This document shows, piece by piece, positions 7,204 through 46,594 of a stretch of DNA of 64,000 nt (its first letter is position 1; each line of letters starts with the position of its first letter). The DNA lies in assembly GCF_020745735.1 (NCBI RefSeq), contig NC_083408.1, positions 76,228,484 to 76,292,483 on the forward strand, in the 5' to 3' direction. Both the position numbers and the translations under genes were made by a program. The DNA comes from Hemiscyllium ocellatum. Its lineage: Eukaryota. The notes under the pieces are model-generated. The model saw nothing but the letters and a program-made list of their open reading frames with translations. It was not told where the DNA came from and searched no databases.

Positions 7204-7512
<309 letters not shown>

Positions 7513-11664: not shown

Positions 11665-11925
11665 CTGTGCCTCACTGAGACCAAGTTCTAACATTTCCAG
11701 AGATTTGCGGATCATGTTGGATTTCTCTTCAACCAAGTTCATCTCATCATCTTTCTTAAGACATTTCAGAGTTTCCAGCAGGCTATGCAAAATAGAGTTG
11801 TGCTCATTTTTTAAGGCTTCAAGTCCTTGGATCACTTGCTTTGTTTTGCCAATAATCTCTTCTTGTGACAGCTTTTCCAGTTTGTCTTCCTTTAAATACA
11901 CCATTGTGGACATGGTGTCATACAT
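11665..11925 (-). CDS. KLC1: Kinesin light chain 1, first coding exon (exon 2; the exon starts at 11926, one nt before the ATG)
   Basis: Translates MYDTMSTMVYLKEDKLEKLSQEEIIGKTKQVIQGLEALKNEHNSILHSLLETLKCLKKDDEMNLVEEKSNMIRKSLEMLELGLSEAQ, near-identical to the vertebrate KLC1 N-terminus. Acceptor gtttttag|G-ATG, donor CAG|gtaaac. 261 nt, ends in phase 0. Confidence 0.97.
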
Positions 11926-12631
11926 CCTAAAAACAAACAGATTAAGTAGAATAAACACGTTAAAATGGTCTGAACAACTAATGCAGTAACCTTGCAATCT
12001 GCAATGATAAATTTGAAGAATGTGACTAAAATTTGTGACATGCAAGTTTTATAACAGAGAGGAGACATTATCGGCTTGCGATAATTAATCCATAGCAATT
12101 GTTGAAACACCATGGAGATCTCTCAGTCATATCACAATTTAAAATGAAATGTAAAGGATTATGGGATCAAAATAAATGTGAAGAGTGAGAAAAAGTCTAT
12201 AGCCTTAAAACTTGTTTTTAAACATTTAGACTACAACATAATGCTGAATTATAGAACACATTTATTGCACTATGAAATAGACAGGCAGGAAGGCTCAGAA
12301 AAGGGGGGACCTTAAAAATACAAAAGATAGGGACACCTGGGCTCACCAAGTGATAATAGGATGCTGTAAGACAATTAAGAACATTTGCCTAAGCATCAGT
12401 GAATCTGTGTGAACAGGACACGAGGTGATAACATTCACAGCTATTCCTTTGTGAAATTAATGAGTGTTTGATTCTGACCCTGAACCGAAACTCCGTACTA
12501 TCAAACTTTGTAATTAACGGTTAGATGCTGCCAATTATAATAGTTTCTTATTACCCCTTAAAAGTGGGGCAGTCACAGGGAGAAAAGAAATCTATGCTGT
12601 TACAAAACCCTGACTTGAGAGTTCAAAAGGA

Positions 12632-12634
<3 letters not shown>

Positions 12635-12682
<48 letters not shown>
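12635..12682. repeat. (GA)24 microsatellite
   Basis: Seen directly. Confidence 0.97.
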
Positions 12683-12686
<4 letters not shown>

Positions 12687-13003
12687 GAGAGAAAAGCCAT
12701 TTTAGTGCCGAGGCTGTTGAATCCAGTAGAAAATTAACTCGGTGCTTATCTGCTTTGGATTGAATTTAATTGCATTTTGAGACTTTTTGATGATTTTGAG
12801 TAGCCATTACAGGTTATGAAATGCAAACTCTGTAAAAGGAAATATTAATAAAGCTAACTTACTTGCTGTTTTCACAGACCTTACAGATTGCCCCACTGTC
12901 AATTCTAACTAATCAGACCTTATGTTTTATTTGAATTTGAATCAGAAACTTGAAAAGAAGGCATGTTTAATTCGAGACTAATAAATCATTTTAAATACAA
13001 CCT

Positions 13004-13730
13004 TGCAGTAACATTTCAGCCTCAGGCACAGAATGATTCTGTGCTTAAGATAAAAAGCAGTAACCTGCTCCAGCTTAAAATTCTTGTAAACCTAACACTG
13101 AAGAGATTCTGACACAATCGGTTGGGAAGCCATTTTATGGTCAAAGGTTTGCCCTCCTTGCTAAGAAGCCATTTCATAAAACAATTATATCAGACATGCG
13201 AGCTGGGCAAGGTTACCTTATGACATCTCCCACTTAATTTAGACTAGTACTTCTTTATAGGAACTTATCTCGCCACCAGATGCCAACTCAGCTGGATTTG
13301 TTTTTCCCACCTGATGGTCTCAAGGCCAGTAGAAGCGATCAGTCAAGCACACACACATCTGTCAATTAACTTCTCTTCCTTATGAATTATTGTCTTTCAC
13401 TATTATCTGTCTAATTAAGAACATGCAATGTTTTTGTAAACTTTTGTATAAAGGAAGCCACTTTGTATCAGTACATTGGAATAGCCTGCTGGGGCACCTG
13501 AAAAGCTGGTACCATACTCTCCTAGGTTATTAGAACCTACTTAGTTTACCTTGTAGGTATCAGTGTAATGTTGTAACAGTGATGCTATTAGTGAATAAAG
13601 AGGATGACTAAAACTAAACTAACTGTAACAGGCTTTTATTCCAGACTTCTTGAGACAAACCAAGAGAGAGGCTTTACAGATTTGAGTCCACAAGGGATTC
13701 CCTGGGCCGTCTCAAATCTGTACTTTAACA
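13004..13730 (+). mobile_element. Probable solo LTR (a second LTR-like block may precede it at about 12273-13000)
   Basis: TG...CA ends, TATAAA near 13447, AATAAA near 13594 and a terminal hairpin. No convincing TSD. Confidence 0.45.
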
Positions 13731-14477
13731 AGTACTAAGCCCAAGTCTAAACAAGCCTAAGAAAGCACTGGGAACTCAAATTGCTTCATTATTAGAGCAG
13801 GAAATATGGCACATGATTAGGCCATTGAAATGTGGATTGATTGTATAATACGCATATCAGAATGTAGTGAAAATTCATTTTGTAACAGCTGCGCTCTTGA
13901 AGAAACTAAAACAGATGAACTGGACTACATATAAAAAGTGATTTTCATTGCTTCCTATAATACCATCAGAACATATCTATATTGTACAGTATAGACATGA
14001 AGTAGATGCATAACTACAGTGAAAATAATTATCAGGACTAGTGAGCGAGCTGAATATTCAGGATTGGTTTCATTCATTTTCCTAAGGCAAGATAACAACA
14101 GTTCATTTGTAGAGATGATGTTAAAATAATTCAATCACAAGAAATCCATAAATTGTCACATTCTAAAATCAGCATTCTCTAAAAACTGTACCACAGATTA
14201 ATTTAGCAGGGTTTACCCTTAACTTTCATCAGGCATAGCATCCTGGATACAGAAGAAGCTGAAAGGCTCGATGTGATAGCTTGGTGTTTGCTGGCAATTA
14301 TCATAAACATTGCAAGTAGTTTCGCACGTGATATAAATGGCAAATGTAGAACAAGATCAGAAAAAAAATGATGTTAATAATCACCAATGGATTCTTCATT
14401 TGAATGAAGAGTATTTAGCAAGGAGAGCAATTTCTCCACTTTCTGGGTGCATGTCATCTGTTTTGTGATAAATTCAT

Positions 14478-15080
14478 ACAGTCATAGACTTGTACAGCAC
14501 GGGAAGAGACTTTTTGACCCAATTCGCCCACGCTAACCAGGTATCTTAAATTAATGTAGTCCCATTTGGCCCATATCCCTCAAAACCCTTCCTTTTCATG
14601 CACCCATCCAGATGCCTTTTAAATGCTGTAATTGTACCAGCATCCACCGCCTTCCTGGTAGCTCATTCCATACATGACCACCCTCAGAGAAACAGCTGTC
14701 CCTCAGGTCCCTTTTAAATCTTTCCCCTCCCATCTTAAACCTAGTTCTGGACTCCCCAGGGCTAGGGAAAAGACTGTCTGCATACCCAATCCATGCCCCT
14801 CATGATTTTATAAACCATTCAGGCTCCAACACTCCAGGGAAACAGCTGCAGCCTGTTCAGCCTCTCCCTGTAGCTCAAACCCTCCAACCCTGACAACATC
14901 CTTGTAAATCTTTTCTGAACCCTTTCAAGGTTCACAACATCCTTCATATAAGAGAGAGCCCAGCATTGCATGCAGTATGTCCTGTACAGCTGCATCATGA
15001 CCTCCCAATTCCTATACTCAAAGCACTGACCAATAAAAGGAAAGCAGACCAAATGCTCTCTTCACAGTCCTACCTACTGC
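14478..15080 (-). mobile_element. CR1 LINE 3' fragment
   Basis: LERVQKRFTRML motif and the CR1 tail. Confidence 0.88.
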
Positions 15081-15084
15081 CAAG

Positions 15085-15561
15085 TTCTAAACAAACAAAA
15101 TTTATTTACAAAATTACAGAATGAAACACAAAAACAGGAAACTAAATACCGGATTACCTATCCTATCCAAATGCGACTTAATGATGCTGTTCCAAAAATA
15201 CTTGCAACAGTCCCAAAACACTCATCCCATAGCACAAACAGTAAAAAACAAAGAGAGAGCACTCAGCAGCATTTTTCACATATCTCCTGCTGTAACTGAA
15301 CTCACTAAAGTTCTAAACTGAACTTAAAAACTCCAGCTAAATGAAAGCTAGCTACACAGCTAGCTGGCCACTCCCCTTTGATTATACCAGTTTCTTTGAA
15401 GACATGAAAGTCTTAGTTTGGAGTGTTATCTGTTAGAATAAACCAAAGGACCCCAGATAAAACTTTCAAACCCAACCTAGTTGGAATCTTGGGTCATTAT
15501 AACTTCTCTGAAAAAAGGTCAAGGGCATAGTAACCTCGTAAAAAGAACCAGTATTATGACA
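15085..15561 (-). mobile_element. Probable partial solo LTR
   Basis: Minus strand begins TGTCA, with TATAA near 15383 and AATAAA near 15103. Confidence 0.38.
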
Positions 15562-15879
15562 CACTTTAAATGAAAATAATTTTACTGAACAAAAATCAAT
15601 GAATCACAACTAGCCGTTCAGTTACATTTAAAGTACAGTAAAGAAGTACTTATTTTCTAAACTAAACTTCTAACTGTTTTCTCATCTGACTTCCATCCTC
15701 AATACGAAAAAAAAGATTAACCCCTTTGTCCAAGGTCTGTACGAAGGGTTTGTATAAAGGTTGAGCGGTCTTTGGGCCTTCCACTTACATTTGGCAAGGT
15801 TCTCTTCTCAAAGTTCTCCCAACTGTGCCCAATCCAACAAGTGAGGCCCTTCAATGCATCATGTTCATGCTAGTCATTG

Positions 15880-17175
15880 AATACCTGTCCACTCGAGCCC
15901 CAATTTCCAGCATATGTTCTGTAGCCTTGTATGCTAGAGCACTTCAGGTGTTCACTTAAATACTTTTGAATGTTGTGATAGTTCCTCCTTCTACCAACAT
16001 TATGTCCTCCATTCTCTGGACAAAAACATCTTTCCTTAAATCTACACACCCTGGTCACTTACTCCTCGACTAAGTGAAAAGTTTATTTTATCTACCCTGC
16101 CTATGTCCCTTACTTGTGTACATCTCAAATCAGGCCTTTGTCAGCCTTCTCTGCACAAAAGAAAACAACCCCAGCCTCTTTCAATGCAACATTCTAACCT
16201 AGGTAACATCCTGGTGAATCTTCTCTGTACCCTCTCTACTGCATTCACATCTTTCCTAATGAGTGGTGACCAGAACTGCATTTAGCACTCTAGATGTGGC
16301 CAAACTAATGTCTTATCCATCATAACCTTCCAACTTTTGTATTCAATGCCTCATTTAATCAAGACAAGTATCCCATTTGTCTTCATTCACATTACTCATG
16401 TATCCCATTGCCATTAAGGATCTATTAAGATGCACACCAAGATTCTTCTGATCCTCTCTACTTCGTTGGAGCCTACCGTTCCTTGTGTACTCCTTACCTT
16501 ATTAGACCTCTCAAGTGCATCACTTCCATTTTTATGGATTAATTTCCATTTGCCACCATTCTGCCCACTTGACCAGCCGATCTATATCATTCTGTATTCC
16601 AAGGCTTTCCTCCTTGCCAATTACTACATTAGTTTTCAGGCAAACTGCAAATATATAGATCAAGTCTCCTATATTCATCTCTAGATTATTAATACACACC
16701 ACAAACAGCATTATTCCCTGCAGCATGCCACTGGTCACAGATTTTCAGTCACAAGCACAACTTTCATATGTCATCCTCTGCCTCTTGCCACTAAATCAAT
16801 TTGCATCCAATTTGCTAAATTGCACTGGATACCATGGGCTCATATCTTCTTGACCAATCTCTCATGAAACACATCAAAAGTCCATGTGAAATCAATTATA
16901 CTACCTTCATCTACACAATTTGTTACCTCCTCAAAACTCCATCAAACCTGGCAGAAATTATCACCATCGAATATGACATGCTAACCATTGTGGATTAATC
17001 CTCGTCTCTCCAGATAGAGATGAATTCTATCCCTAAGAAAATTTTCCAAAAGCTAAAATTATAGCTCCCTAGTCTATCCTACGATCCTTCATGATTAATG
17101 ATATCACATTAACTGTCCTCTAGTTCTCTGGTACCTCTCCTGTGGCTAGAAAGGATTTGAAAATTAATGTCAGCA
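15880..17175 (-). mobile_element. Old CR1 LINE fragment
   Basis: Decayed RT motifs (IDRLVKWAEWWQMEIN). Confidence 0.75.
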
Positions 17176-18269
17176 TCGTGGACGTAGACATCTTTGCTCA
17201 GAATAGTAATGGTTCTATGATGCTTTTATTCTGGAGTCTTGAACCTGGAACTCTTCTTAGTTGCGCTCTCACAAAAGTGTAACTCAACATTAAGGATCTT
17301 TCAGTTAACAAGAGGTTTAAACTCTTTTAGCCAGCAAACCAAATGTAATCTTTTTAAAAAAAGACACAAAGTACCTAGTTTACCAAGCCGAGTATTTATT
17401 GCTCACTACTAATTGTTCTTTAGGCGGAGCTCTGAACTGCCTTCTCGAACCTCTGTAGTCCATAATGTGTTGGTAGATACATAGTGCTACTATTAAGGCA
17501 CATCCAAGATCCTGACCCAGCAACAGTGCGGAAACAGGAGTATGATTAAGCTAAGCTGTTGTTCAACTAGTCATCCATCTGCTGTCACGATTTTGGCATA
17601 AGCCCCAAAAGACAAGGAAACTTTGGCTGCCTCTGGCACTTCCAGAGCTTAGGTTAATTCAAAGTGGTGGCAATTTCATTTATTTGACATTTCTGTAATA
17701 AAAATGAGTATCTTATGAGGCCATTTTAGAGGGGTTCTAAACATTATTGGAAGAAGTTATATTGTGTTTTGCAACGGGCTTGCTTAATTTATTTCTTTTT
17801 AAAATGTGCTCAAAACAGAACATAACCTCTCAACCAATACAAACTTCTCTTTTTAACCCTTTTGCATTTCTATTATTTTGTTCTCCCAAGCAACTAGTTA
17901 ACTTAAACACAGCAACAAGAAAGGAAGCAGGGAGAGGATATAATAAGACCAAGAATCAGGAACCCAACCTTTCAGCTTCAACCCAGCAGCAAGACAGGAG
18001 GCATGGTTTTATACCTGCAGCTTTAGGGAACTGATAATTAGGGGGAGAAAATCAGGTAGTGAAATCACAGGCAAGTGGTGGATTAATTTGTTTGTGATTT
18101 GAAAAACTTTTTTTGGAAAAGCAGATTAACTGAGAAACAATAGGAACAAGTGAAAGTCAAGGTCAATCTAATAAAGTAATATAATAAAGTAAAGTAAGGC
18201 AAGGAATTAAAGTTAGCATAAAGGAAGTTTAAAACTGATTAAGAAAAATCAAGTTTAAACTCAAGACAT

Positions 18270-19025
18270 GACAACACAGTTTAAGAGAAATGTGTGACTT
18301 GTAATATGTGGGAAGTCATGGACTGCACATATACAAGTACTTACAGCTGAAGAAATACAAGTTCAAAATCTCAATTGATTAAAAACACTGTGGCACATCT
18401 GCAAGGCTAAGAGTTAAGTAGAAAGGTGGTCACATTGCAGCTTTGGAGTTGAGAGGAAAGGAGGCAACTGAAGGCAGTTCAAGAGAAATAGGAAGATGCA
18501 GGGATCCACTGACATCCCACTCACAAACTGATTTTCCATTTCAGAAACTGATTAGAGCACTGGATCCTCAGGGGAATGCCTTTAGAGCCATGTTTGTGGC
18601 ACTGCTAGCAGGCTCATTTGTACAGCAGGGGAAGAAGAACAAAGGAGAAGTGGAGCATTCATTACTTAAGGGAATAAGTTGACGTTTCTGTGTTTGTAAT
18701 TGTGACTCCAGCATTGATGTTGCCTTCCTGTTGACAGGATCAAGGAACTCACAGAGCAGCTACAAGACATTTTTCTGGGGAGGGATAACAACCAGGGGTC
18801 ATTAGCATTGTTGGTATCAATAACATAGTGGGAAGGGAATGTGATCCTGCAATCAGAATATAGGGAGCTACATAGAAAATTAGCAAGCAAGGCCTCAAAA
18901 ATGTAGTAATCTCTGGATTACTTCTAGTATCACAAGCAAGCAACTACAGAAATAGAAGGATAAGGCAGATGAATGTCTGGGCAGAAAGATGGCACAGGAG
19001 GGAAGGCTTTAGATTTGTGGGACAA
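18270..19025 (+). mobile_element. CR1 ORF1 (SGNH esterase-like) remnant
   Basis: Decayed match to the CR1 ORF1 pattern GDS..RG..RRFC...CCLPG.R.KD..E.LQDI...VG.NDI. Confidence 0.65.
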
Positions 19026-19257
19026 GATGTAAATAAAGATGTGTGGAGCTTTTCTTGAATTCAACATGCTGCCATAGTTACGCCAACTATTCCTCATCTA
19101 ACATGAAAGCCATATTAATTGCAAGTACACCAAGTATGAAAGATAAGTGACAATCCCATTTTTAAAATACCGACATTACTTTTTTTAAAACTTGTGGAAA
19201 GTAGTGAAGTATCACGATGCCACAGACAAACTTGCTTTGCTTCCATTTTTATAGCTG

Positions 19258-19900
19258 AGTAGAGGATTGATGAGGGCAGAGCAATGGATGTAATCAATAT
19301 GGACTTCAGTAAGGCGTTTAACAAGGATTCTCACGGTAGACTGGTAAGCAAGATTAGATCACATGGAATACAGGGAGAACTAGCCATTTGGATACAGAGC
19401 AGGCTCAAAGGTAGAAGACAGAGTGGTGGTAGTGAAAGATTACCTTTCAGACTGGAGGCCTGTGACCAGTGGCATATCACGAGGATCGATGCTGGGTTCA
19501 CTGCTTTTTGTCAATTATATAAATGATTTGAATGTGAACATAAGAGTTATAGTGAGTAAGTTTGCAGATGACACCAATAATAGAGGCGTAGTGGACAGTG
19601 AAGAAGGTTACCACAGAGTACAATGGGATCTTGATCAAATGGGCCAATAGGCCGAGGAGCGGCAGATGGAGTTTAATTTAGATCAACGTGAGGTGCTGCA
19701 TTTTGGAAAGGCAAATCTGGGCAGGACTTATATACTCAATGATAAGGTCCTGTGGAGTGTTGCTGAACAAAGAGACCTTGGAGTGCAGGTTGATAGCTCC
19801 TTGAAAGTAGAGTCACAAGTAAATAGGATAATGAAGGTGGCATTTGGTATCTTTCCTCTTTTGGTTAAAACATCAAGTATAGGAGTTGAGAGGCCATGTC
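19258..19900 (+). mobile_element. CR1 RT fragment
   Basis: MDFSKAF, SKFADDT and MEFNLD motifs. Confidence 0.88.
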
Positions 19901-20203
19901 CTTAGAGGGTATGTTTGCCAATATTCCTATCAAGTAAAACAAATTATTAATATTACCACAAGACAGAGCTAGAGAGACAAAAATATACGACAGCAACAAA
20001 GAGATTTAAGTTAAAAACAGAAATAGATACTTTGAGGGAACTGTTGGATTAGTTAAAGCTTTGAAGAGTGCAGTCAACTGGAAATAAGATAATGCTAGTG
20101 CTTGGAAAAACTCAGCAATTTTTAGCACATAGGAGTGAAGCTCCTTTACCTCATGTAAGCATAAATTGTCTTAGAGGGTTCAGTGCTAGGGTCCACCAAA
20201 CAT

Positions 20204-20320
20204 GGGGGCCCTGTTGTGGTGCATTGGTAGCGTCCCTAGCCCTGAGAGACCTGAGTTCAAGTCCCATCTGCTCCAGACATGTGCAATGATATCTCTGAAC
20301 TGAAGAAATAGGAAAAATAG
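20204..20320 (+). mobile_element. Short (about 110 bp) tRNA-derived SINE; relatives near 555-655 (-), 8944-9053 (+), 39848-40040 (+) and 45062-45145 (-)
   Basis: tggtgcattgg...gagttcaagtccc..ctgctccag...ctctgaac pattern shared across the copies. Confidence 0.65.
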
Positions 20321-20367
20321 CTTTTTTTTTTAAAATGCTTGATCTGCAACCTGGCAAATGTAATCAG

Positions 20368-21304
20368 TAGTTGAAAACGTGGTGCTGGAAAAGCACAGCA
20401 GGTCCGGCAGCAACCGAAGAGCTGGAGAATCGACATTTCAGGCAAAAGCCCTTCATCAGAAATGGGCTTGAGAGTGGGTGGAGAGATAATGGGGGGGATG
20501 GTAGCTAGGAGCTCGATAGTTAGATGAAGCTGGGGGTTATAGTGATAGGTCAGAGCGGAGGATGGAGCGGACAGTTGTTAAGGAAGATGGACAGGTAGGA
20601 CAGGTCATGAGGGTAGTGCCAGGTTGTAAAGTTAGATCTGGGATAAGGTGGGGTGGTAAGGGGGAAAAAAAGAGGAACCTGGTGAAATCCACATTGATGC
20701 AGTGTGGTTGGAGGGTTCCCAGGCGGAAGATGAGGCGTTCTTCCTCCAAGTGTCCATGGAGGCGGCCCAGGATGTGCATGGCTGCAGAGTGGGAGGGGGA
20801 GTTGAAGTGTTTAGCCACTGGGCAGTGGGGTTGGTTACTGCCCCATGGCCAAACACTTCAACTCCCCCTCCCACTTCACAGACACTCATGTCCTGGGCCG
20901 CCTCTGTCGGCACAGCTTAACCACCTGATGCCTGGAGGGCGAACACCTCATCTTCCGCCTTGGGACCCTCCAACGACACTGCATCAACGTGGATTTCACC
21001 AGATTCTTCATTTTACCCTCCCCCATCATCTTATCCCAGATCCAACCTTCCAAACCAGCACTGCCCTCATGATCTGTCCATCTTCCTTCCCACCAAGCTG
21101 CTCCACCCTCCTCTCCAATCTATCACCATTACCCCCACCTTTATCTACCCATCGCAATCTCAGCTACCTTCCTCCCAGCCCCACCACCTTCCCATTTATC
21201 GCCCCACCCATGTTTCACAAGCCTCAATCTTCAGATGCTACCTGACCTGCTGTGCTTTTCCAGCACCACACCATCTCCAGCATCTGCAGTCTTCAGTTTC
21301 TCCT
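20368..21304. mobile_element. Foldback Penelope-like element (two inverted 3' ends) with a 12-bp TSD
   Basis: TSD AAATGTAATCAG at 20356-20367 and 21305-21316. Both arms encode the GIY-YIG C-terminal motif HFNSPSH...LIFRLGTLQ..CINVDF. Hammerhead core CTGATGA-agggc-tttt-gcct-GAAA-tGTC on the minus strand at 20432-20459. Confidence 0.85.
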
Positions 21305-21452
21305 AAATGTAATCAGCACTTGGGTTTGACTTGCAAATTTTATGTAGTTTATGTACTGAAATTGACTCATCAGATTGAATCACTGAAATTATTTAGTTAT
21401 CCTGGCCACCATACAACATGTAACATTGGCACTTTTTTTTGTAAACCAAGAT

Positions 21453-27317: not shown

Positions 27318-27389
27318 ATCGTGCTACACTAGTTTGAATAAACTACAGGGTTGTTTCGCAGTATTGTTCTTTCCGAGGATGATATCCAA

Positions 27390-35869: not shown

Positions 35870-36137
35870 TTGCATACTGTGCACAGAAGAATATTCTGAT
35901 GAATTGGGTGTCTGAGAACCCGTCGGGTTTGCTGGGATGGTAGAAATTAATTATGCAGCACATTCCCTTGGACTTTTTTTTACAAACATGGTAGGTTAAT
36001 AATTAGGAGACAGTAGATGTATTCTAATTTGTCTTTTTTATTATACTGATATTTGTTATTGATTGTATTTTTCAAATGATTTTATATGTTTGTAAAGTTA
36101 AAAAAAATTTGCTAATAAATATATTTACAAAAACAAA
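35870..36137 (+). mobile_element. Probable L1-clade LINE 3' end
   Basis: Reads AQKNILMNWVSENPSGLLGW, resembling the L1 ORF2 C-terminus, followed by a T-rich UTR, AATAAA and an A-rich tail. Confidence 0.5.
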
Positions 36138-36172
36138 CTTACATCCTGTATTAGAGGTATGTGCCAAGGTTT

Positions 36173-36190
36173 GGGGGGGGGGGGGGGGGG
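36173..36190 (+). repeat. Poly-G tract (18 nt)
   Basis: Seen directly. Confidence 0.9.
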
Positions 36191-39089
36191 TTAATTCTCA
36201 TGAATTACTTGGTCTTCTCACAATTCTGTATACCTCAATCATATCATCCTCAGCTCAGCCTTCACCACTCCATGGATAAAAACCCAGTCTATCCAGTCTC
36301 TATTCATAACAGACTTTTCATCCCAGGCAACATCCCAGTGAATATGCTAGGATGCAATCCATCAATTCCAGAGGATTCATCTATCTTTAGCCCCATTAGC
36401 TTCCCTACTACTTATTCTCCAGTTAATATATTAATTTCTCCCTCCCACTTTGCCACTTGATTTAGTATTTTCAGAATACTACAGCATATTTTACTGTGAA
36501 GACTAATGGAAAGTTTTTGTTCATCTTCTCTGCTATCTCCTGGTTCACCAGTATTATTTCCTCAGTCTCATTTTGCAAGGGATCCATGTTCACTTTAGCC
36601 TCTCACTTCCTTTTAATACATTTAAAGCAGCTCTTATTGCCTGTTTTTGTATAACTTATTGTTTTACCCTCAATTTTATTTGATGTTCTTTAAAATCTTT
36701 GCCAATTCTCTCGCAATCATTAATCGTTGTCACATGGTATGCTTTTCCTTTCAGTTTGATACTACTGAATTTCTTGGTTAATTTATCCTCTTTCTGGAAT
36801 CCTTCTTCCTCCAAGGGATAGCTCTTTTAATTATTTTCTTCAACATCTGCCATTGTTCCTCAATCTTTTTTTCTGCTGAAGTGCTTTTCAAGTCCACTCC
36901 AGGCAATTTTTCCTTCATTCTTTGTAATTACCCTTACTTGGGTTCACTAGTGGTTTTCAAGCTCAAACTGAATGCAAAATTTTACTATATTATGATCACT
37001 GTTTTCTAGATACAAAATAAATTTATCCCTGATTGGATCCAAAATAGATTTGTTTGAGGAAACTGTCTTGAATACGCTATGAATTCTTTCTCATACCCAC
37101 TTGGCAATTTGATTTTCCCCAATCTGCATGTGATTTAAAATCATCCATGATTAATGTACTTCCTTTTTACATGCCCTCATTATCTCCTGATTTAATCTGT
37201 CTTGTTGTAATAGCCAAGACTTTTTTTTAGAAAGATTGTGGTTGCAATAGACTATTCCCACCAGTGCCTTCCTCCCCTTGTTATTTCTTACTTGTACCAA
37301 TATAGATTCTACATCATTCAATTCAAGATTATTTCTTGCATTTATCTATTTCATACTCCCAAAACCAGCAACCACTCTTCCCTTCCTGCCTGCCCTTTTG
37401 AAAAGTCATATACCTTTAACTAGTTTGCTCATGTGGAAAATAAAACAGAACAGTATAACAGGTCCATATCCCACTAGTCCCTGCCTGTTTACATGTCTAA
37501 ATACCTCTAAAATGTAGTCACCATATCTGCTTCAACTACCTCCTATGGCGGTGTGTATCTGGCACCTAGTAGCCTCTGTACAAAAAAAGTCTGCCTTCCT
37601 CATTTCCTTTAAATTGACCTCCTCTCATCTTAAGCCTAAGTCCTCTATTTTTCCCACCGTGGGGGAAAAAAAAACTCCAATTATTCGTGCCTCAAAATTT
37701 TATATACTTCTGTCAGGTCATCCAATGGCTAGAATATCATACTCATTCATTTTATTTGTGCTATTAATTCATTTATTTTGCTGTGAATATTAACAAGTCA
37801 CTAATATCTTTACCCATTTGATCCTATTGCTTATTTTTGGTCTACTCTTTTTCCCCCATCCTGACCCACCGTATATCGTTATGTAAGTTGCTGTTACATT
37901 GCTGCCACATCCTCTTGTTTTGTAGGGTTATCTATCTATCGCCCTCCAGAACCCACCACCCTACTCCCATCTAGTAGAAAACTCTTCTACAACTCTTCTT
38001 CATGCACTCCAAGAACACTTCCAAGTGATGCCTATCCCACCGGGCTGTTTTATGTCCATTCCTCCCATGTCAATCTGAATCACGCATTTAATTCCTTGAC
38101 ATTATTTATCCTATACCAGTTTGCCTGCAGCTCGCGTAATAGTAATCCCAAGGTCCGGCAAAAACTGATCAAAATCATTTCCAACCTTGGTTTCTACAAA
38201 TTGTCGAGCAGATTTGTTTATCATGTTGTAAACTGTTAACAGCAGCAATTTAGTAGAACTAATCCCACCAGTCGGCACAACAACACTGATATTTCCTCAT
38301 TTTACAAGGAAATGAGTCACATTACACCACCGCCAAAACCTTGGTCAGGCCGCAAAATATGACGGGATAAGGTCTCCCATCCTGCGATTTGCAATTCCAA
38401 GAACTATTAACGTTATTCAACTCAAAAAATGTATTAACATAAATTTCAATCAACGTATCAAATATCAAAACATCCAGAATCAGTTTCATAAACACGTGGC
38501 ATCGATAGTACCCTAATCCGAAAGTAAAAACAGCAGCTTCGCTTGTTCCTCACTAAAATCGCTGAAGAATTAAATACAAGAACGCATTCGGCGGACCCTT
38601 GACATAGAATTAGTTCTCGCTACCACTTTCAGACATCAAGCAGATCGACAGCGCACTGGCCACACCTGAAAGTGAAAGAATGACACATGCACACCCTCGA
38701 CCACCCTGAAAATCTAGTTACCGTTTGCTGCAAATTGATGGTCCGATCTCAGTGCGAGGATGTCCAGTCAGCAGCGTTTCCTGTCAGGCCAGGGAAGAGA
38801 GATGGGGAAATGAAACGGGCGTCAGTGACTAAAGGCGGTTTCGTTTTCACCGGCAACGACGTCTTTTTCCGAAGAAATTGTCTGGAACGGAGCCCCGATC
38901 CAGTTTTTTTTAAAAAAAGGAGTCTGCTTACACCCAGAACCGCACTAAATGTGAGAATATCGCGATGTCACTTCACTCCGAGCAGGGCTTTTAATATTAC
39001 TGTTACAGACGTTCGCCAATATTATCATACCAATGTAACCCTATAATGAATTCTTCCAGATTTTATTTCTGAGCGGTATTCGCCCCTCA

Positions 39090-39390
39090 CTCTGCCCCCA
39101 GCCCCCCGCGGATTCACAGCAAAAGATGGCGGCTCCTCCCTAACCGGCAACTCCTTACGTCAGTGTTTGCCTGCCACCAGACCCGCCCTCGTCCCTAAGC
39201 CTCTGTGCACGAGCAGCCCTGCCCCGTCTCCGGAACTACGCGAACATGCACCACACGCCGGCGGTGCACGCGCATCCATGTTTCTCCCCCTCGAAGAGCG
39301 CACGGTCGCCGCTCCTGGACTAACGGTGCGCGTGCACTCCACCACGGCTCTTGGACTGGGCGCGCGCCCCTGGTCCCGCCCTTAGCCAGG
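39090..39390 (-). promoter_or_regulatory. KLC1: CpG-island promoter and probable non-coding exon 1 of KLC1 (candidate donor after 39159)
   Basis: The most CpG-dense unique segment in the window. GC boxes CCCGCCC at 39182-39188 and 39375-39381, YY1-type AAGATGGCGGC at 39123-39133, NRF1-like GC repeats at 39264-39274 and 39327-39337, ETS-like CCGGAA at 39230-39235. Minus-strand donor GAC|gtaagg. It lies upstream of KLC1 exon 2, which starts at an acceptor and so needs a UTR exon. Confidence 0.78.
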
Positions 39391-39624
39391 CACTGAAGAT
39401 TATGAGGTCACAGGCTGGAATGTGCTTTGGCTCGTTTTCCTGGCAAAGCATGTTCGACTCAGCATATTTCTATGTTTGCTGAACTCACACAAAAGCGCAT
39501 TGCCCTTTAAGATAGGATGCTGTCAATACTGTACTTAATTTGTTTACCTAAGTGTGCAGTCAGTGATCTTTCAACTCAACCGACTACTTGTTCCTTTTTG
39601 TCATGTTCAAGGGGTGTGAAAGGG

Positions 39625-39792
39625 CTGGAAACAAAAATAGAAAAACTCAGCAGGTCTGGTAGCTTCTGAAATAAACAGAGATAACGTTTCGGGTCCGGTG
39701 ACCTTTCTTCCGAACTCAAGAACATACGTTGCCAGACCTGCTGATTTTTTTCCAGCAATTTCTGTTTTCGTTTCTGATTTCCAGCATCTATG
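39625..39792. mobile_element. Mini foldback PLE-derived repeat (third family), about 250 bp upstream of the KLC1 CpG island
   Basis: Inverted arms tcagcaggtctgg / ccagacctgctga. Minus-strand agtt-CGGAAGA-aaggtc(accg)gaccc-GAAACGTT, with CUGA mutated to CGGA. Related short copies lie near 1-52, 6875-6960, 33230-33335, 42280-42402 and 46272-46410. Confidence 0.68.
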
Positions 39793-39847
39793 GGAGAGGG
39801 GGTTAGGATGTCTAGGGTTTGTGTTAACATGGAAACAGAAAATTAAG

Positions 39848-40651
39848 GATCTTGAGGCGCATAGTGTGTTCCTAGCTCTAGACAGAAGCGCAAGTCTCAC
39901 CTGCCCAAAAGGTGTGTCATATTTTTGAACATGCTGATTAAAAAATTTTTTGGTGGGGGGTTCATGTGGTGCAGTGGTTGCATCTTGAGTACCTCTACCT
40001 GCCATGTAGATATGCCATGAAAGGTTGATTTAAATATGTATGTTAAAACCATGTTCATACTATGTGGACAGGGAGTAAGCAATGTTGAATTGAATTAGCC
40101 TTATTGTCACATGTATTCAAATGAATACAATGAAAAGTTTACAAGTCACCCCAATACAGCACATCTTAAGTACAAAGGTACCTAGGTACAGATTTTTAAA
40201 TAATATACTCTTAGGAGAAAAAAAGAGAAATAAAATGTCCAGCATTACAGATCATAGGACTAAATTAGAAAAATTATTTTAAAAATCTCAGAATAACAGT
40301 CTTTCCAAGTCAATCCATGCTATTACCTAGCCTCCAGTAACTGACTTCCACAGCTTCACCATTGCCTGCGCCATACCCACAAACGTAGGAGTTGCCAACT
40401 TTTTGCCACTGGGCCCACGACCAGGAGGTCCATCTCAGCAACAGATTAATGTTGATCAATGGCAGGTGGGACTTGGACATGGACCTCCTGAGCAAGAGGT
40501 ACTCAAGATGCAACCACTGCACCACATGAATCCCCTTAACCCCACCAAAAAAAATTTTTAATCAGCATGTTCAAAAATATGACACACCTTTTGGGCAGGT
40601 GAGACTTACGCTTCTGTCTAGAGCTAGGAACACACTATGCACCTCAAGATC
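39848..40651. repeat. Inverted repeat with arms at 39848-40005 and 40459-40651
   Basis: The arms are near-identical reverse complements apart from a few substitutions and two indels. Confidence 0.93.
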
Positions 40652-40769
40652 ATTGATCAATGTCAAAGAGAATGGTAATGGGGTAAACTAAGATCAAAGG
40701 ATGTATCTAGAAGGTATGAATAGCACAATGATGATTAATTGCACAGAACGAAGCCACTTGTTCCATCAT

Positions 40770-42237
40770 CATAGCTAAAGTGATTGCTCGGCCCCCTTGT
40801 TGAGATACTTGTATCATCAATAGCCATGGGTGAAGTCCTGAAATATTGGAGGCTAGCTAACAAGGTGCCGCTATTTAAGAAAGGTGTTAAGGAAAAGCTA
40901 GGGAACTATAGATGAGTGAATCTGACATCAGTGGTGAATAAATTGTTGGACGGCATTCTGAGGGACAGGATTTACAAATATTTGGAAAGGCAAGGACTCA
41001 TTAGGAATTGTCCACATGGCTTTGTGCTTGGGAAATTGTGTGTCACTAACTTGATTGAGTTTTTTCCAGTGACAAAGAAGATTGATGAAGGCAGATGTTG
41101 TGGATGTTGTCTACATGGACCTCAGCAAGATGTTCAACAAGGTTCTGCAAGGTAGACTAGTAGCAAGATTAAATCACATAGAATCCAGGGAGAGCGAGCC
41201 ATTTGGATACAAAATTGGTTTGAGGGTTGGAGGCAGAAGGTGGTTTCTCAGACTGGAGGGCTATGACCAGCGACGTGCCACAAGGATTGGTTCTGGGTCC
41301 AATGCTTTTTGGCATGTATATACATGATTTGGGTGTCAATATAGGAGGAATGATTAGTAAGTTTGGAGATGACACCAAAATTGGTGATGTAGTGGACAGT
41401 GAAGAGGTTATCTCCGAGTACATGGGACCTTGATCAGATAAGCTGAAGAGTGGCAGATGGAGTTTAATTTAGATAAATGTGAGTTCCTGCATTTTGGTAA
41501 GACAAATTAGGACAGAACTTATACACTTAATGGCAAAGTTCTGGGGAGTGTTGTTGACCAAGGAGATCTTGGAGCACGGGTTCAAAATTCCTAATGGAGG
41601 AGTCGTTTGGTATGCTTGCCTTTATTGGTCAGTGCTTTAAGTATAGAAGTTGGGATGTCATGTTGCGGCTGTATGGACATTGATTAAGCCACTTTGGAAA
41701 AGTGCCTTCAATTCTGGTTTCTTTCCTATAGGAAAGATGTTAAACTTGAAAGGGTGCAGAAAATATTGACAAGGACTTTGCCAGGTTTGGAGGCTTTGAC
41801 CTATAGGGAGAGGCTGACGATACTAGGGCTATTTTTCCTGGAGCATCGGAGGCTGAGGGGTGACCTTATAGAGGTTGAAAATCGTGAAGGACATGGATAG
41901 GCTAAACAGTCTAGGTCTTTTTCCCGGGGTAGAGGAATCCAAAACTAGAGGGCATAGGTTTAAATTAAGAGGGGAATGATTTAGAAGGGACTTAAGGAGA
42001 ATCTTTTCATGCAGAGGGTGATGCATGAATGGAGTGAGCTGCCAGAGGAGATAGTGGAGGCTGATACAATTACAGCATTTAAAAAGCATCTAGATGGGTA
42101 TTTGAATAGGATAAATTTAGAGGGATATGGGCCAAACACTGGCAAATAGGACTAGATTAATTTAGGATATCTGGCTGGGGTATGGACAAGTTGTACAAAA
42201 GGGTCTGTTTCCGTGCTGTACAACTCTATGACTCTAC
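40770..42237 (+). mobile_element. CR1 LINE between COA8 and KLC1
   Basis: RT motifs (KFGDDTKIG) and the tail ctctatgactcta. Confidence 0.9.
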
Positions 42238-45163
42238 GTCTGCACTAGCCAAAACAACAAGCTATCTAACCTAATAAAAGCAAGTACTGCGCTAGGAGCC
42301 TGAAATAAAAATGGAAAGTGCTGGAGAAACACAACAGGTCTAGCAGCATCTGTGGAGAGAAGAAAGCAAAGTTAATACTTCAAATCCAACGACTCTTCTT
42401 CAAAATATTCAACCTAACCCCAGTTTGCGGCATCTAGTTCATATCCCTACAGGTTACGGCACTTTAGGTGCAAATTCAGAGACCTTATAAATATGTTGAG
42501 GATTTTTGCATCTACTACTCTTTCAGGCAGTAATTTTCAGGTCCCAAGTATCTTTGTGGTGAAAATAATTCTGCCTTCATTTGCTGTGAAACCACAGGAA
42601 TGTGTGGCAAGGCAAAAGGGGCACTTTTCAAAAAAATAAACCTGGAGCATTTCTTTGTTCAATTATACTTGGCATGCAAGTATTAACAGAATGGAGGAGG
42701 TTTGTGTATTACTGAGCATCCTCTTCACGTGTTTAGGATGGTTTCCTTTCTTTATTACTCAATGTCTCTATTTATAAAATTAAAGATCACAAATGTATCT
42801 TTAATCGCATTCTCAACATGTTTCTTGTGTTCTTAACATGAAAGGAAGAGCATTGATGAAGTAGATAGTTGTTCTGAGGACACTGCCCTGAAGCACTTCT
42901 ACCATCAATGTCCTTGGGTAGAGATAGCAGACCTCAAACAATTACAACTATTTTCCTTTGCGCTCCATAGAACTCCAACCAGTGGAGAGCATTCAATACT
43001 CATTGATTTCAAATCTTCTTGGACTCCCTAATGTGACAGTTGATCAAATGCTGCCTTGATATTAAAGGCAATAATTTTCACCTTACCCTGGAACTTGGTT
43101 CCTTTATCCAAGTTTGACTCAAGTCTGTAATGAGGTTTAGAGCTGATTTGTCCTGGCAAAATCTAAGTGCTACTCGATATCTTGATGATATCTTTCATCA
43201 TTGATGGCTGAGAATAGATTCAGGGCAGTAATTGGCTTTGTCCAGGACATATTTAGACAATTTTCCATTTTGTCAGATAGATAACATGTTGTAGCTTTGC
43301 TGGAATAGCTTTGTTACAGCCACTATTAGTTCAAGAGCATGGGTGTTTTGGGAGAGTTTAGGACCAGAGGGCATAATCTCAGAGTAAAGGAATTTCTTCT
43401 TTCAGAGAGTAGCGAAGCTATGGCATTCACCATCACAGAGGGCTATAGAGTCAAATATATTCAAGGCCATGATAGGTTTTTAATAAGGAAGAGAATCACG
43501 TTATGGGAAAAATGCAGGAAAATGGATTTGAGAATTATCAGATCAGCCATGATCTCAATGAATAGCAGAACAAATTCAATGGGCTGAATGGCCTACCTCT
43601 GCTCCTGTGTCTTAAGGTCTTAGCTAGAGTGCTGAATGCTTAAAATGTTGTCAGGGCCCAGAGTCGTCTACTTTCTATGAGGCCTAGTAAAAGATTGTAG
43701 ACTTTTTATACTTTAATCATCTTGTCAATTAAAAAGTTAATACAGTTTTGCATACATAACATCCCTGGTTAGTTACCCAATATTTATCAATCTCTGCAAG
43801 AAGTTATATATTAACTATGTAGTAATTTTTTTCTCACTTAAATTTCAATTCACGTTTCTTTGCAGTAGCTTGCAGTTTAGCAGAACAGAGTAATAATGAA
43901 TGTGGTGAAGATTTCCATGTATACATTAGGAGGCTTATGTTAAAACCAGAAACGTTTGAGGCAAGGACACCAGGAAGAGCCAACGTGGGCTAACATAGGC
44001 TTTAAATTGAAATGCTGGATAGTTCAGTTCAAATTTGTCAAGCAGTCTACACAATGATATGCAAAGAAGCAACTCAAAAGATACTTAGATACTCCATGCT
44101 AATTTACATCATAAATCTAATCATCAGCTAAAAAGTAGTAGGAGAAGTTGCACAACATAAGGGTTTAGTAATGATCACAAATAAACAAGAGGATGCCCAG
44201 TAACCTCTCAACCTCCTAGAGGACCATCATCACCAGTAATCGAACTGGACAAAAGAAATTAAAATCTCTAAAGCTTTAAAGGCAGAACAGAGATTTGGCA
44301 CCCTGCAATGTGCACATTTACTTTAGAAGTAATAAAATGCATGTTTCAGAAATAATGAAACCATAATTCAATCTCTCTGTTCAAATTGTCACATTGTATC
44401 TCTTGAAATTGATAGCAAAGCCAATTGAGCAAGTATTTTAATTTCTCAGTTTTCTTATCTTCGCTCCTAATAAAGTAAATGACGTGGCTAAGTAGAGAAA
44501 ATACTACAAAAGGTGAAGAATTTTCTGAGATGCACCAGATTCCAAATGCAATAATATCTAATACAATACATACACAATACCATCAATAAAACTCTAATTT
44601 TATTTGAGTGGTTGATAATAAAATAAAATCTAGCTCCTCAGATGGTTTGGGAGAAAATTACATGGTGTGTGTTAATGAGTGATTCAGACTAGCAGATTTA
44701 TCTTCTCAACAAATTGATTCAGTGCCTCAGACTTGGAGTTAGGAGAAAGGAGAGAAACCGCCTCCAACTTCCAATCATTATGCAGTGACAATTGCCAGAA
44801 AATGGATGCGTATGGATATGAAGATTGGAATTGGTTATGATTTTAAAATTGCTCAATAGTATATTGAATAGTGAAAACTCATGTTTAAAACTGTGGAATC
44901 TACTGGCTTAAACAAAGTTACTGGTTTCTACTGAGATAAAATAGCAAAAAACTGGTATTCTTCCATTTCTCATTAAAGAAGAATTTTCGATTGCTGTGCA
45001 ATTAATGGGCTCTTATAAACTTTGTGATCAGTTATTGTTTTATTGTTTTATTAGAGTTCTTTTTAACTGATCTGTTCACAGATGTTATTACACACCCCTG
45101 GAACAGGTGGAACATGAACCCGACACTATTACACAAACACAAGGGTTGAAAACACACAATGTC

Positions 45164-45169
45164 TTTATT
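45164..45169 (-). terminator. Candidate COA8 polyadenylation signal (AATAAA); alternatives are ATTAAA at 45463-45468 and further AATAAA near 45040-45052
   Basis: TTTATT on the + strand about 400 nt downstream of the COA8 stop. Actual usage is unknown. Confidence 0.4.
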
Positions 45170-45208
45170 TATAAGATAAACACAGAATATACATCATAAT
45201 TTGATTAC

Positions 45209-45426
45209 TGTTGTGGCTCTGTTCGCTGAGCTGACAACCAGAAGCGGCAGATTCAAACCACTACAAATGCCGGAGGAAAGATCACAGAAGCGCTTCACAG
45301 GAGGCTCCCAAGCACTGAGGATGTCACCTAGACAGGGGACGAAACGTCTGCAACACAAATTCCCAGCTCGGCGAACAGAACCACAACAACGAGCACCCGA
45401 GCTACAAATCTTCTCACAAACTTTGA
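45209..45426 (+). mobile_element. Young 5'-truncated Penelope-like element end with an inverted 5' segment and a 13-bp TSD
   Basis: TSD ATAATTTGATTAC at 45196-45208 and 45427-45439. The segment 45209-45232 is an inverted copy of about 45364-45388. Contains the hammerhead, and CpGs are retained. Confidence 0.8.
45312..45351 (+). ncRNA. Minimal type I hammerhead ribozyme (Penelope-type)
   Basis: gca-CTGAGGA-t-gtcacct(agac)aggggac-GAAA-CG-TC-tgc: stem I gca/tgc, intact core, stem II with 6 of 7 pairs, palindromic ACGT at helix III, GUC cleavage triplet. Confidence 0.8.
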
Positions 45427-45572
45427 ATAATTTGATTACAATTGTGTATGTCTTAGGATACCTTTAATTCAAGATGCTAAAATTTATAACCAGATCTTAA
45501 TATCCTCATGACAGAGTTAAGTTTCAACTCCAAGCATTTACATCCTATTAAACTTTTCATTGAACAGGATAT

Positions 45573-45675
45573 TCATTGTTCGACTTCCTTCCTCTTTCTC
45601 AGTTTCCTCCAGGCATTCTGCAGCACAACTCGACCCATTAACCATGTGATAGTAAAATTACGCTTGTACCATTCC
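45573..45675 (-). CDS. COA8: COA8 last coding exon (exon 5)
   Basis: (K)EWYKRNFTITWLMGRVVLQNAWRKLRKRKEVEQ*, matching COA8 DWYKRNFAITFFMGKVAL. Acceptor ttcttcaattag|G, stop TGA at 45573-45575. Confidence 0.94.
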
Positions 45676-46503
45676 CTAATTGAAGAAACATGGAAAAAGT
45701 GACTTATTCATTTGACAACGTTCACTAGGTTATAAGGTTATACCTAATTTAGGCATGAAACTTCAGAGTATTACAATGTTGAGCAATGTATTTCAGCAAT
45801 TTCCTTTCTATCCAGCAATATATAAATGGTTTGATTTCAACCTGTTGACAATAATAATACCTTGGTAAAGGTGAGGAAAAAATGAAGAACTTTGATAAGA
45901 ATCTCAAATTTTAAATCTGTTTTTATTAGCCTCTCCATTTTCATATAGCTATTATTCACCTCACTACAATGTACTTTCGGGACAAAAAGTGAACAGGGCT
46001 TCTTTAAAATTTCTGGTCAGTTTTCTCCTTCACTTACGAATGTAATGTTGCAATGCTACATATATGTTCTACTTAAAACCATCAGATTTATTGATCAGAT
46101 CTCAATATTGGTAGGGAAGTTTATAGATTGTAAAGCAAGTGATTATTTATTTTAATTTGCTATATGTACATAGCTATAGTGGTATATAACAATATAACTT
46201 ACAGAAATAATCACACTAACATTATTCTTTATGTCCAAGAATATATTACTTTTCAAGCACAGCAGACTACACTAAGTTCTGATATAGAGTGACCGGACTT
46301 GAAACATGAACTCTGTTTTCTTCCCACAAATGTTGCCAGACCTGCTGAGTTTTTCCAGCAATTTCTGCTTTTGTTTCTGATCTCCAGCATCCGCAGTTCT
46401 TTGTTTCATACCACACTGCCAATTAATTTGTAGCCCTCTTAATAAAATCAAATATTTAAACATTGTTTACACTATTTAAAATTTAATCAGCAGGTTGACT
46501 TAC

Positions 46504-46594
46504 TTATTATAGTTCACATGTTTATTATAATTTACATCAAGAAAATCCTTATAAAATTCAGCCATCTCTTCTGCACTGAGAGTATTTTTTCTCC
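46504..46594 (-). CDS. COA8: COA8 exon 4
   Basis: (G)[29 protein letters not shown] plus AA, matching COA8 TLNAEEMADFYKEFL. Acceptor tttttcag|GG, donor AA|gtaagt. 91 nt, phases fit exons 3 and 5. Confidence 0.94.

What the first reader, a model, noticed from the sequence alone, without database searches (positions are those of the whole stretch)
11665..46594. COA8 exon 4 splices in frame onto KLC1 exon 2: a potentially ancient COA8-KLC1 read-through protein
Seen: COA8 exon 4 ends in phase 2 (...TAT AAT AA|gt at 46504). The KLC1 exon 2 acceptor leaves exactly one nucleotide (G, 11926) before the ATG. Joining them gives AAG ATG TAT GAC, i.e. ...HVNYNK-MYDTMST... with no stop. The genes are tandem on the same strand, with only about 6 kb between the COA8 stop and the KLC1 CpG island. 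Established: COA8/APOPT1 lies directly upstream of KLC1 in human, and COA8 is a mitochondrial protein with an N-terminal targeting sequence. From memory, unverified: human annotation includes an APOPT1-KLC1 read-through with the same junction. Inference: if the junction is used in shark as well, a chimera joining most of COA8 to full-length KLC1 may have been kept across jawed vertebrates and could link kinesin-1 to mitochondria. The acceptor position at -1 lies in UTR, so KLC1 coding alone does not force it. Chance frame compatibility is 1 in 3.
Basis: partly seen in the sequence, partly recalled or inferred. Interest (0 to 1): 0.72.

Follow-up and report, generated by a model that had tools for sequence, protein, structure and literature searches.

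The report
COA8–KLC1 splice sites are frame-compatible
In this shark, the last-but-one exon of the mitochondrial gene COA8 could splice in frame onto the first coding exon of its neighbour KLC1, and three bony fishes show the same fit, but nothing shows that such a fused message or protein is made, so it is probably an inherited coincidence between two ordinary genes.

Summary
On the minus strand, COA8 exon 4 (46594-46504) ends AA|gt in phase 2. KLC1 exon 2 (11926-11665) begins ag|G ATG. Joining them reads ...HVNYNK-MYDTMST... with no stop.

I added a comparison across species. The same two sites give the same in-frame join in three teleosts, where COA8 also lies just upstream of KLC1 on the same strand. 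The one-base gap between the KLC1 acceptor and the ATG holds in every vertebrate KLC1 copy I could read: 8 loci as DNA, and 28 of 28 genomic ORF fragments. So the potential for a chimera dates back to the common ancestor of jawed vertebrates.

This is weak evidence for a selected fusion. The COA8 donor phase is fixed by COA8 coding. The KLC1 acceptor abuts its own start codon. The compatibility is therefore one ancestral 1-in-3 event, inherited passively.

I found no transcript or protein with this junction. The only COA8+KLC1 protein in the databases is a fish gene model joined by a different path, and it looks like a merged prediction.

[quoted passage not shown] Human annotation already lists a separate kinesin-light-chain locus here. 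Expression in shark could not be tested with these tools. Interest is low to moderate.

The parts
49376..49439 (-). COA8 exon 3 (64 nt, EKEKFIHSRLKAKGIALRDEE + G). Its donor is in phase 1, so a join to KLC1 exon 2 would be out of frame.
   Evidence: Sequence read (cag|GAG ... GAA G|gtgggt). tblastn with fish COA8 protein P0349. Direct reading of G + exon 2 gives GGA TGT ATG ... ATT TAA, a stop after 11 codons.
46504..46594 (-). COA8 exon 4 (91 nt). It ends AA|gtaagt in phase 2 and is the proposed donor of the chimera.
   Evidence: Pfam PF10231 COA8, E 6e-10, profile positions 71-100 of 122. The homologous exon ends AA|gtgagt in three teleosts.
45573..45675 (-). COA8 exon 5 coding part (acceptor ttag|G, then EWYKRNFTITWLMGRVVLQNAWRKLRKRKEVEQ and stop TGA at 45575-45573). 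The proposed chimera skips it.
   Evidence: Pfam COA8 profile 98-122. tblastn.
45164..45169 (-). First AATAAA downstream of the COA8 stop (about 400 nt of 3' UTR). It is the likely COA8 poly(A) signal that a read-through transcript would have to ignore.
   Evidence: Pattern scan and sequence. Its use is inferred, not shown.
38722..39400 (-). KLC1 CpG-island promoter and non-coding exon 1. The inferred donor is CAAACG|gtaact, with the last exon base at 38722. The chimera skips this exon.
   Evidence: CpG observed/expected 0.95 and 0.75 in 38001-40000. Sequence. The donor was placed by resemblance to GAACG|gtaaga used in the A. toweri gene model. The 5' limit is approximate.
11665..11926 (-). 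KLC1 exon 2 (acceptor ttttag|G, ATG at 11925-11923, 87 codons, donor CAG|gtaa). It is the proposed acceptor of the chimera.
   Evidence: It is 90-98% identical to vertebrate KLC1 N-termini. The same ag|R ATG layout is present in loci L001-L008.
7213..7443 (-). KLC1 exon 3 (231 nt, [22 protein letters not shown]...[10 protein letters not shown]).

Best explanation
COA8 and KLC1 are two ordinary, separately expressed neighbours on the same strand. The COA8 exon 4 donor and the KLC1 exon 2 acceptor happen to be phase-compatible. This compatibility was already present in the common ancestor of sharks and bony fishes. It has been carried along passively since then. The donor phase is locked by COA8's own reading frame. 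The acceptor sits one purine before KLC1's own start codon, where splice-site and start-context constraints leave no room to drift.

If RNA polymerase II occasionally fails to terminate at the COA8 poly(A) site, COA8 exon 5 is not defined as a terminal exon and KLC1 exon 1 has no acceptor. The spliceosome would then pair the strong COA8 exon 4 donor (GTAAGT) with the KLC1 exon 2 acceptor, 34.6 kb downstream. That is the usual second-to-last-exon to second-exon pattern of read-through chimeras. The message would encode COA8 without its last 33 residues, then a junction Lys (the AA ending exon 4 plus the first base of KLC1 exon 2), then full-length KLC1.

Shown: the anatomy, the in-frame arithmetic, and its conservation.
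Inferred: that any such transcript is at most a rare by-product with no selected function.
For: - Exact junction and open frame.
- COA8 and KLC1 identities.
- Synteny, donor phase and acceptor offset are identical in Notothenia coriiceps (L001), an unnamed teleost (L004) and Ataeniobius toweri (L008).
- The acceptor offset of 1 nt also holds in a second shark and three further vertebrate contigs. In 28 of 28 KLC1 genomic ORF fragments an Arg (AGR) follows pyrimidine-tract codons directly before the Met.
- AA plus any base can never make a stop, so keeping the join open needs no extra constraint (direct reasoning).
- No protein with the exon 4 to exon 2 junction appeared among 150 cluster representatives, 120 short fragments and 120 mid-length KLC1 entries.
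- The only merged entry uses another path.
- Published surveys report that skipping the upstream terminal exon and the downstream first exon is the commonest conjoined-gene pattern. Such products were amplified from 8 of 10 randomly chosen tandem pairs less than 10 kb apart, and only 16% of conjoined genes keep both reading frames (PMC2953495).
Against: - The one-base offset is invariant across all sampled gnathostome KLC1 genes. In the one paralogue I could check (Tetraodon KLC4, no COA8 within 10 kb upstream), the inferred acceptor lies 22 nt before the ATG, with in-frame TAG and TGA. So the distance is not fixed across the KLC family, and some constraint on KLC1's layout is possible.
- Human annotation keeps a separate protein-coding kinesin-light-chain locus here.
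- My negative protein searches were limited by length filters: complete fusions of about 700-790 residues were out of range. No RNA-seq could be searched.
Confidence: 0.75

Rival explanations
1. One reading: a COA8(exons 1-4)-KLC1 chimeric protein is really made and has been kept by selection since the gnathostome ancestor, giving kinesin light chain a mitochondrial address.
For: Frame compatibility and tandem synteny are conserved in 4 of 4 species where both sites could be read. The KLC1 offset is invariant in all sampled vertebrates, whereas the KLC4 paralogue has a longer leader containing stops. A separate kinesin-light-chain locus next to COA8 exists in human annotation.
Against: Both sites are constrained by their own genes, so conservation is expected without any fusion. 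No transcript or protein with the junction was found. COA8's N-terminus is a cleaved import presequence, the mature protein is inside the organelle, and the precursor is unstable (PMC6328941). This would import or destroy KLC1 rather than tether it to the surface. The chimeric intron would be 34.6 kb and would cross an active CpG-island promoter.
Confidence: 0.07
2. Read-through from COA8 into KLC1 occurs and matters as regulation, not as a protein. Examples are transcriptional interference with the KLC1 promoter, or a way to couple the output of the two genes. On this view the in-frame join is incidental.
For: The intergenic gap is short (about 6 kb in shark, less in teleosts), and the same-strand order is conserved. 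Read-through is reported to alter expression of parent genes in most conjoined genes (PMC2953495).
Against: There is no expression data of any kind here. KLC1 has its own strong CpG-island promoter. Conserved synteny of the wider MARK3-CKB-TRMT61A-BAG5-COA8-KLC1-XRCC3 block (PMC8319724) needs no such explanation.
Confidence: 0.08
3. One of the two proposed splice sites is not the real exon boundary, so the join is an artefact of exon calling.
For: No shark transcript was available to confirm either boundary.
Against: Exon 4 plus exon 5 give a continuous match to the Pfam COA8 profile (71-100, then 98-122). GTAAGT or GTGAGT follows the same AA in four species. A pyrimidine tract plus AG plus one purine plus ATG is conserved in 8 loci. 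Spliced database proteins start at this Met or read exon 1 into it with the expected Arg codon.
Confidence: 0.03

Closest known systems
Human read-through locus between COA8 (APOPT1) and KLC1: ENSG00000256500 / AL139300.1 (older clone name RP11-73M18.2, equated from memory)
   Same: Same gene pair and order. It is listed as a protein-coding 'kinesin light chain' apart from KLC1 and beside COA8. From memory, unverified, it is annotated as an APOPT1-KLC1 read-through.
   Different: I could not see its exon junction or protein. Whether it uses exon 4 to exon 2 is unconfirmed. No paper in the library describes it functionally. The shark case has no transcript support at all.
Conjoined genes, also called cis-splicing of adjacent genes or transcription-induced chimeras (e.g. 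TNFSF12-TNFSF13, Kua-UBE2V1, NME1-NME2, as listed in PMC2953495)
   Same: Same-strand neighbours a few kb apart. [quoted passage not shown] Both reading frames would be preserved.
   Different: Those are defined by observed chimeric RNAs. Here only the genomic precondition is shown. That survey found little conservation of human conjoined junctions in fish and frog, whereas here the precondition is conserved from shark to teleost.
Merged gene prediction 'Kinesin light chain 1, partial' of Ataeniobius toweri (P0253)
   Same: It carries COA8 (PF10231) and KLC1 TPR domains in one annotated protein from the same tandem locus.
   Different: It starts inside COA8 exon 3 and runs through exon 5 to an internal donor before the stop. 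It then passes through a piece of the CpG-rich KLC1 exon 1 into exon 2. That is a different path, typical of a predictor fusing neighbours, and it is not evidence for the exon 4 to exon 2 junction.

Membership tests
COA8 / APOPT1 (Pfam PF10231) | Sequence match to the COA8 family profile above the curated cut-off | tested here: met
   The exon 4 ORF scores 39.7 bits (cut-off 27), E 6e-10. Exon 5 scores 20 bits on its own, covering profile 98-122. tblastn with fish COA8 P0349 hits exons 3, 4 and 5.
COA8 / APOPT1 (Pfam PF10231) | Five coding exons with an N-terminal mitochondrial presequence | tested here: inconclusive
Only exons 3-5 lie in the window. Exon 2 (65 residues in teleost L004) and exon 1 are absent from it. 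Human COA8 has five coding exons and a 26-residue presequence (PMC6328941).
Kinesin light chain 1 orthologue | N-terminal heptad-repeat region orthologous to KLC1 (starts MYD/E.MSTMV), followed by exon 3 VMMALS...[10 protein letters not shown] | tested here: met
   It is 90-98% identical to vertebrate KLC1 exon 2 fragments. Named KLC1 proteins were recovered with the same N-terminus. Exon 3 was found at 7443-7213. The TPR exons lie outside the window.
Read-through chimera (conjoined gene / cis-SAGe) | Two adjacent genes on the same strand, close together | tested here: met
   COA8 stop at 45573, KLC1 CpG island at about 39.4-38.7 kb, same strand. The same order is seen in three teleosts.
Read-through chimera (conjoined gene / cis-SAGe) | An observed RNA containing exons of both genes | not testable with these tools
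   No RNA-seq or cDNA collection for sharks can be searched here. Protein-database proxies gave no entry with the junction, but the length filters excluded full-length fusions.
Read-through chimera (conjoined gene / cis-SAGe) | Junction through canonical parental splice sites, with both reading frames kept | tested here: met
   This holds at the genome level only. AA|gtaagt plus ttttag|G ATG gives AAG ATG, open throughout.

The most novel reading that the evidence does not exclude
A COA8(exons 1-4)-KLC1 fusion protein is translated at a functional level in all jawed vertebrates. It would be a roughly 450-million-year-old read-through gene that sends a pool of kinesin light chain to mitochondria, or subjects it to COA8's redox-controlled stability. 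The invariant one-base acceptor offset of KLC1 would be partly maintained for that reason.
Probability: 0.06. Interest if true: 0.7.

Novelty: new member of a known kind. Interest (0 to 1): 0.25.

Why it matters
Deeply conserved read-through proteins are rare. Published surveys found almost no human conjoined junctions conserved in fish. If a COA8-KLC1 chimera were really made from shark to human, it would be a striking case of a conserved conjoined gene, and it would suggest a new link between a cytochrome oxidase assembly factor and microtubule transport.

What is shown here is only that the genomic precondition is ancient. That is worth knowing as a pointer for a cheap RNA-seq check, but on present evidence the arrangement is an ordinary consequence of two conserved neighbours with fixed splice sites.

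Tried and rejected
- Exhaustive HMMER search of 1.84 billion cluster representatives with KLC1 exon 2. Several hits had N-terminal extensions. All were translated intron or GC-rich 5' leader, and none contained COA8.
- Word-index search for 48-152-residue fragments found no COA8 domain. It did supply the 28 ORF fragments used for the acceptor comparison.
- Search with a spliced gecko KLC1 N-terminus (P0007, 135-430 residues) found one COA8+KLC1 entry (P0253). Its locus shows a different, probably artefactual join.
- Search with the COA8 part of P0253 for longer-than-COA8 proteins (219-696 residues) returned only P0253 and three over-long COA8 models. It found no exon 4 to KLC1 fusion. Complete fusions would exceed the length window, so this is not a proof of absence.
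- ESM Atlas look-ups gave nothing usable for COA8 pieces.
- Seven literature searches found no paper describing a COA8/APOPT1-KLC1 chimera. The supplements held for the conjoined-gene survey do not list the pair.
Rfam found no match at gathering score over 11-50 kb, nor at E<=1 over 44900-45700. I dropped that argument.
- The bacterial promoter/terminator scan is irrelevant to a vertebrate locus and was ignored.
Full report
**1. The observation**

Reading the minus strand confirms the finding base for base.
- COA8 exon 4 begins after tttcag at 46594 and ends ...AAC TAT AAT AA|gtaagt. Its last exon base is 46504.
- KLC1 exon 2 begins after a clean pyrimidine tract and ttttag with a single G at 11926, followed by ATG TAT GAC ACC ATG TCC.
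- A scripted join translates in one frame as [45 protein letters not shown]... and stays open to the exon 2 donor at 11665.

The window has no N runs.

**2. Gene identities and anatomy**

Pfam places the exon 4 ORF on COA8 (PF10231) profile positions 71-100 of 122 (E 6e-10) and the next exon on positions 98-122.

The canonical COA8 join is AA|G GAA TGG..., giving ...NYNK-EWYKRNFTITWLMGRVVLQNAWRKLRKRKEVEQ*, with the stop at 45575-45573. Exon 3 lies at 49439-49376 and ends in phase 1.

A fish COA8 protein recovered later (P0349) hits only exons 3, 4 and 5 in the window. Exons 1 and 2 therefore lie beyond its end.

For KLC1:
- The only CpG island in the window is at about 38-40 kb.
- The likely exon 1 donor is CAAACG|gtaact at 38722.
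- Exon 2 is 11926-11665, and exon 3 is 7443-7213.

The chimeric intron would be 34.6 kb. It would cross the COA8 terminal exon, its AATAAA at 45169, about 6 kb of spacer, the KLC1 promoter and exon 1, and the 27-kb first intron.

Only the exon 4 donor gives a productive join. From exon 3 (phase 1) the reading frame hits TAA after 11 codons (read).

**3. Is it more than chance?**

Only one untranslated base separates the acceptor from the ATG, and AA plus any base is Lys or Asn. The only requirement is therefore the phase match, which has a probability of 1/3.

Database searches with the exon 2 peptide returned many short ORFs called on unspliced genomic contigs.

In all 28 KLC1-type fragments that extend upstream, the residue before the Met is Arg. 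It is preceded by Phe, Leu, Ser, Cys or Pro-rich stretches. This is the signature of a pyrimidine tract plus AG plus one purine plus ATG.

DNA fetched for eight loci shows the layout directly:

| Locus | Source | Acceptor |
|---|---|---|
| L003 | second shark | cag\|G ATG |
| L006 | unidentified vertebrate contig | tag\|A ATG |
| L007 | unidentified vertebrate contig | cag\|A ATG |
| L002 | unidentified vertebrate contig | cag\|A ATG |
| L004, L005 | one unnamed teleost | cag\|G ATG |
| L001 | Notothenia coriiceps | tag\|A ATG |
| L008 | Ataeniobius toweri | tag\|G ATG |

Three teleost loci are compact enough to hold both genes. COA8 exons 3-5 lie 7-10 kb upstream of KLC1 exon 2 on the same strand, and exon 4 ends ...TAT/TAC AAC AA|gtgagt in phase 2. 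So 4 of 4 species are in frame, and the junction codon is always Lys.

The potential for the chimera is therefore as old as the shark-bony fish ancestor.

**4. Why this is weak evidence for a selected fusion**

The four observations are not independent. The donor phase cannot change without breaking COA8. The acceptor is wedged between its own AG and the KLC1 start codon, where the splice consensus (purine at exon position +1) and the start context both act.

One ancestral coincidence at 1/3, passively inherited, explains everything seen.

One control cuts slightly the other way. In the Tetraodon KLC4 paralogue (flanked by an L2-type ribosomal-protein gene and kinase-domain genes, which I take to be MRPL2 and PTK7; no COA8 within 10 kb), the inferred acceptor is 22 nt before the ATG, and the leader has in-frame TAG and TGA. 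The acceptor-to-ATG distance is thus not frozen across the KLC family. This is a single locus with an unverified acceptor. KLC1 also differs in having four extra coding residues (MYDN/MRED) that bring its ATG up against the intron.

**5. Is the junction used?**

I could not search RNA data. As a proxy I looked for proteins carrying COA8 in front of KLC1.
- None of the 150 best cluster representatives does. Their N-terminal extensions are intron or GC-rich leader, with no COA8 domain.
- None of 120 short fragments does.
- Among 120 mid-length KLC1 entries, 16 proteins in hand are spliced across exons 2-3. Of these, 14 start at the canonical Met. One gecko model reads exon 1 in frame. One, P0253 from Ataeniobius toweri, carries COA8.

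The P0253 locus shows that it is joined from an internal donor in COA8 exon 5 (...ACT AAA AAA CG|gtgcaa), through a piece of the CpG-rich KLC1 exon 1, into exon 2. That is a different path and looks like a predictor merging neighbours.

A last search with the COA8 part of P0253 for proteins of 219-696 residues found no other fusion. Complete fusions (about 700-790 residues) lie outside every length window I could reach, so absence is not proven.

**6. What is known**

The conjoined-gene survey (PMC2953495) reports four relevant points:
- The commonest pattern drops the upstream terminal exon and the downstream first exon.
- Such products could be amplified for 8 of 10 randomly chosen tandem pairs less than 10 kb apart.
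- Only 16% keep both frames.
- Human junctions showed no significant conservation in fish or frog.

So a trace COA8-KLC1 read-through in shark would be unremarkable, and an in-frame one is expected for a sizeable minority of pairs.

For human, the library confirms that ENSG00000256500 is AL139300.1. It also shows that RP11-73M18.2 is treated as 'a kinesin light chain' distinct from KLC1 and named next to COA8. That RP11-73M18.2 is the older name of the same locus rests on my memory. Its description as an APOPT1-KLC1 read-through, and its junction, also rest on memory only. No paper discusses such a chimera.

**7. Function**

Human COA8 has a cleaved 26-residue presequence. [quoted passage not shown] Its precursor is mostly degraded by the proteasome unless cells are under oxidative stress (PMC6328941).

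The chimera would keep COA8 profile positions 1-100 and lose the C-terminal EWYKRNFTIT... segment. A protein of about 570 residues behind such a presequence would be imported, stalled at the import pore, or degraded.

**8. Verdict**

- Conservation of the precondition is newly shown.
- The interpretation as an ancient functional protein is untested and unlikely (about 6%).
- The most likely reading (about 75%) is an incidental, inherited phase compatibility between two conserved neighbours, with at most low-level read-through.
- This is a further, unconfirmed candidate of a well-known kind. A junction-read count in public shark and fish RNA-seq would settle it.

Noticed in passing
Rfam gave no match on either strand at gathering score, nor at E<=1. 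By eye the plus strand has CTGAGGATG...GACGAAACGTC, which is close to but not the CUGAUGA core. It looks like part of a common shark repeat.
   Followed up: partly
window 53214-54050, minus strand: A 279-residue open stretch in COA8 intron 2 matches reverse transcriptase (Pfam RVT_1, E 4e-19). It is a LINE-type retroelement remnant in the same orientation as the gene.
   Followed up: partly
L008:3001-21322 (Ataeniobius toweri, GCA_036250305.1): The deposited model 'Kinesin light chain 1, partial' (P0253) merges COA8 exons 3-5 with KLC1. It does so through an internal donor in COA8 exon 5 and a fragment of KLC1 exon 1, and is probably a gene-prediction fusion of neighbours.
   Followed up: yes
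L009:9900-10060 (Tetraodon nigroviridis, KLC4-like gene beside an L2-type ribosomal-protein gene and kinase-domain genes): The KLC paralogue has its inferred exon 2 acceptor 22 nt before the ATG, with in-frame TAG and TGA in the leader. This is unlike the one-base layout that is invariant in KLC1.
   Followed up: partly
P0007 (Sphaerodactylus townsendi, UniRef entry): A gecko KLC1 model starts at an upstream ATG in exon 1 and reads in frame into the normal Met (…GEDVRR-MYDNM…). In some species the KLC1 leader exon is therefore open in the KLC1 frame.
   Followed up: no
window 38722 and L008:6509: The inferred KLC1 exon 1 donor is similar in shark (CAAACG|gtaact) and in a goodeid fish (GAACG|gtaaga). 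This gives the same CGG/CGR Arg codon across the exon 1-exon 2 junction.
   Followed up: no
window 39680-39800, minus strand: A SINE-like element (…gaaaggtcaccggacccgaaacgtta…ctgctgagttttt…) lies just upstream of the KLC1 CpG island.
   Followed up: no
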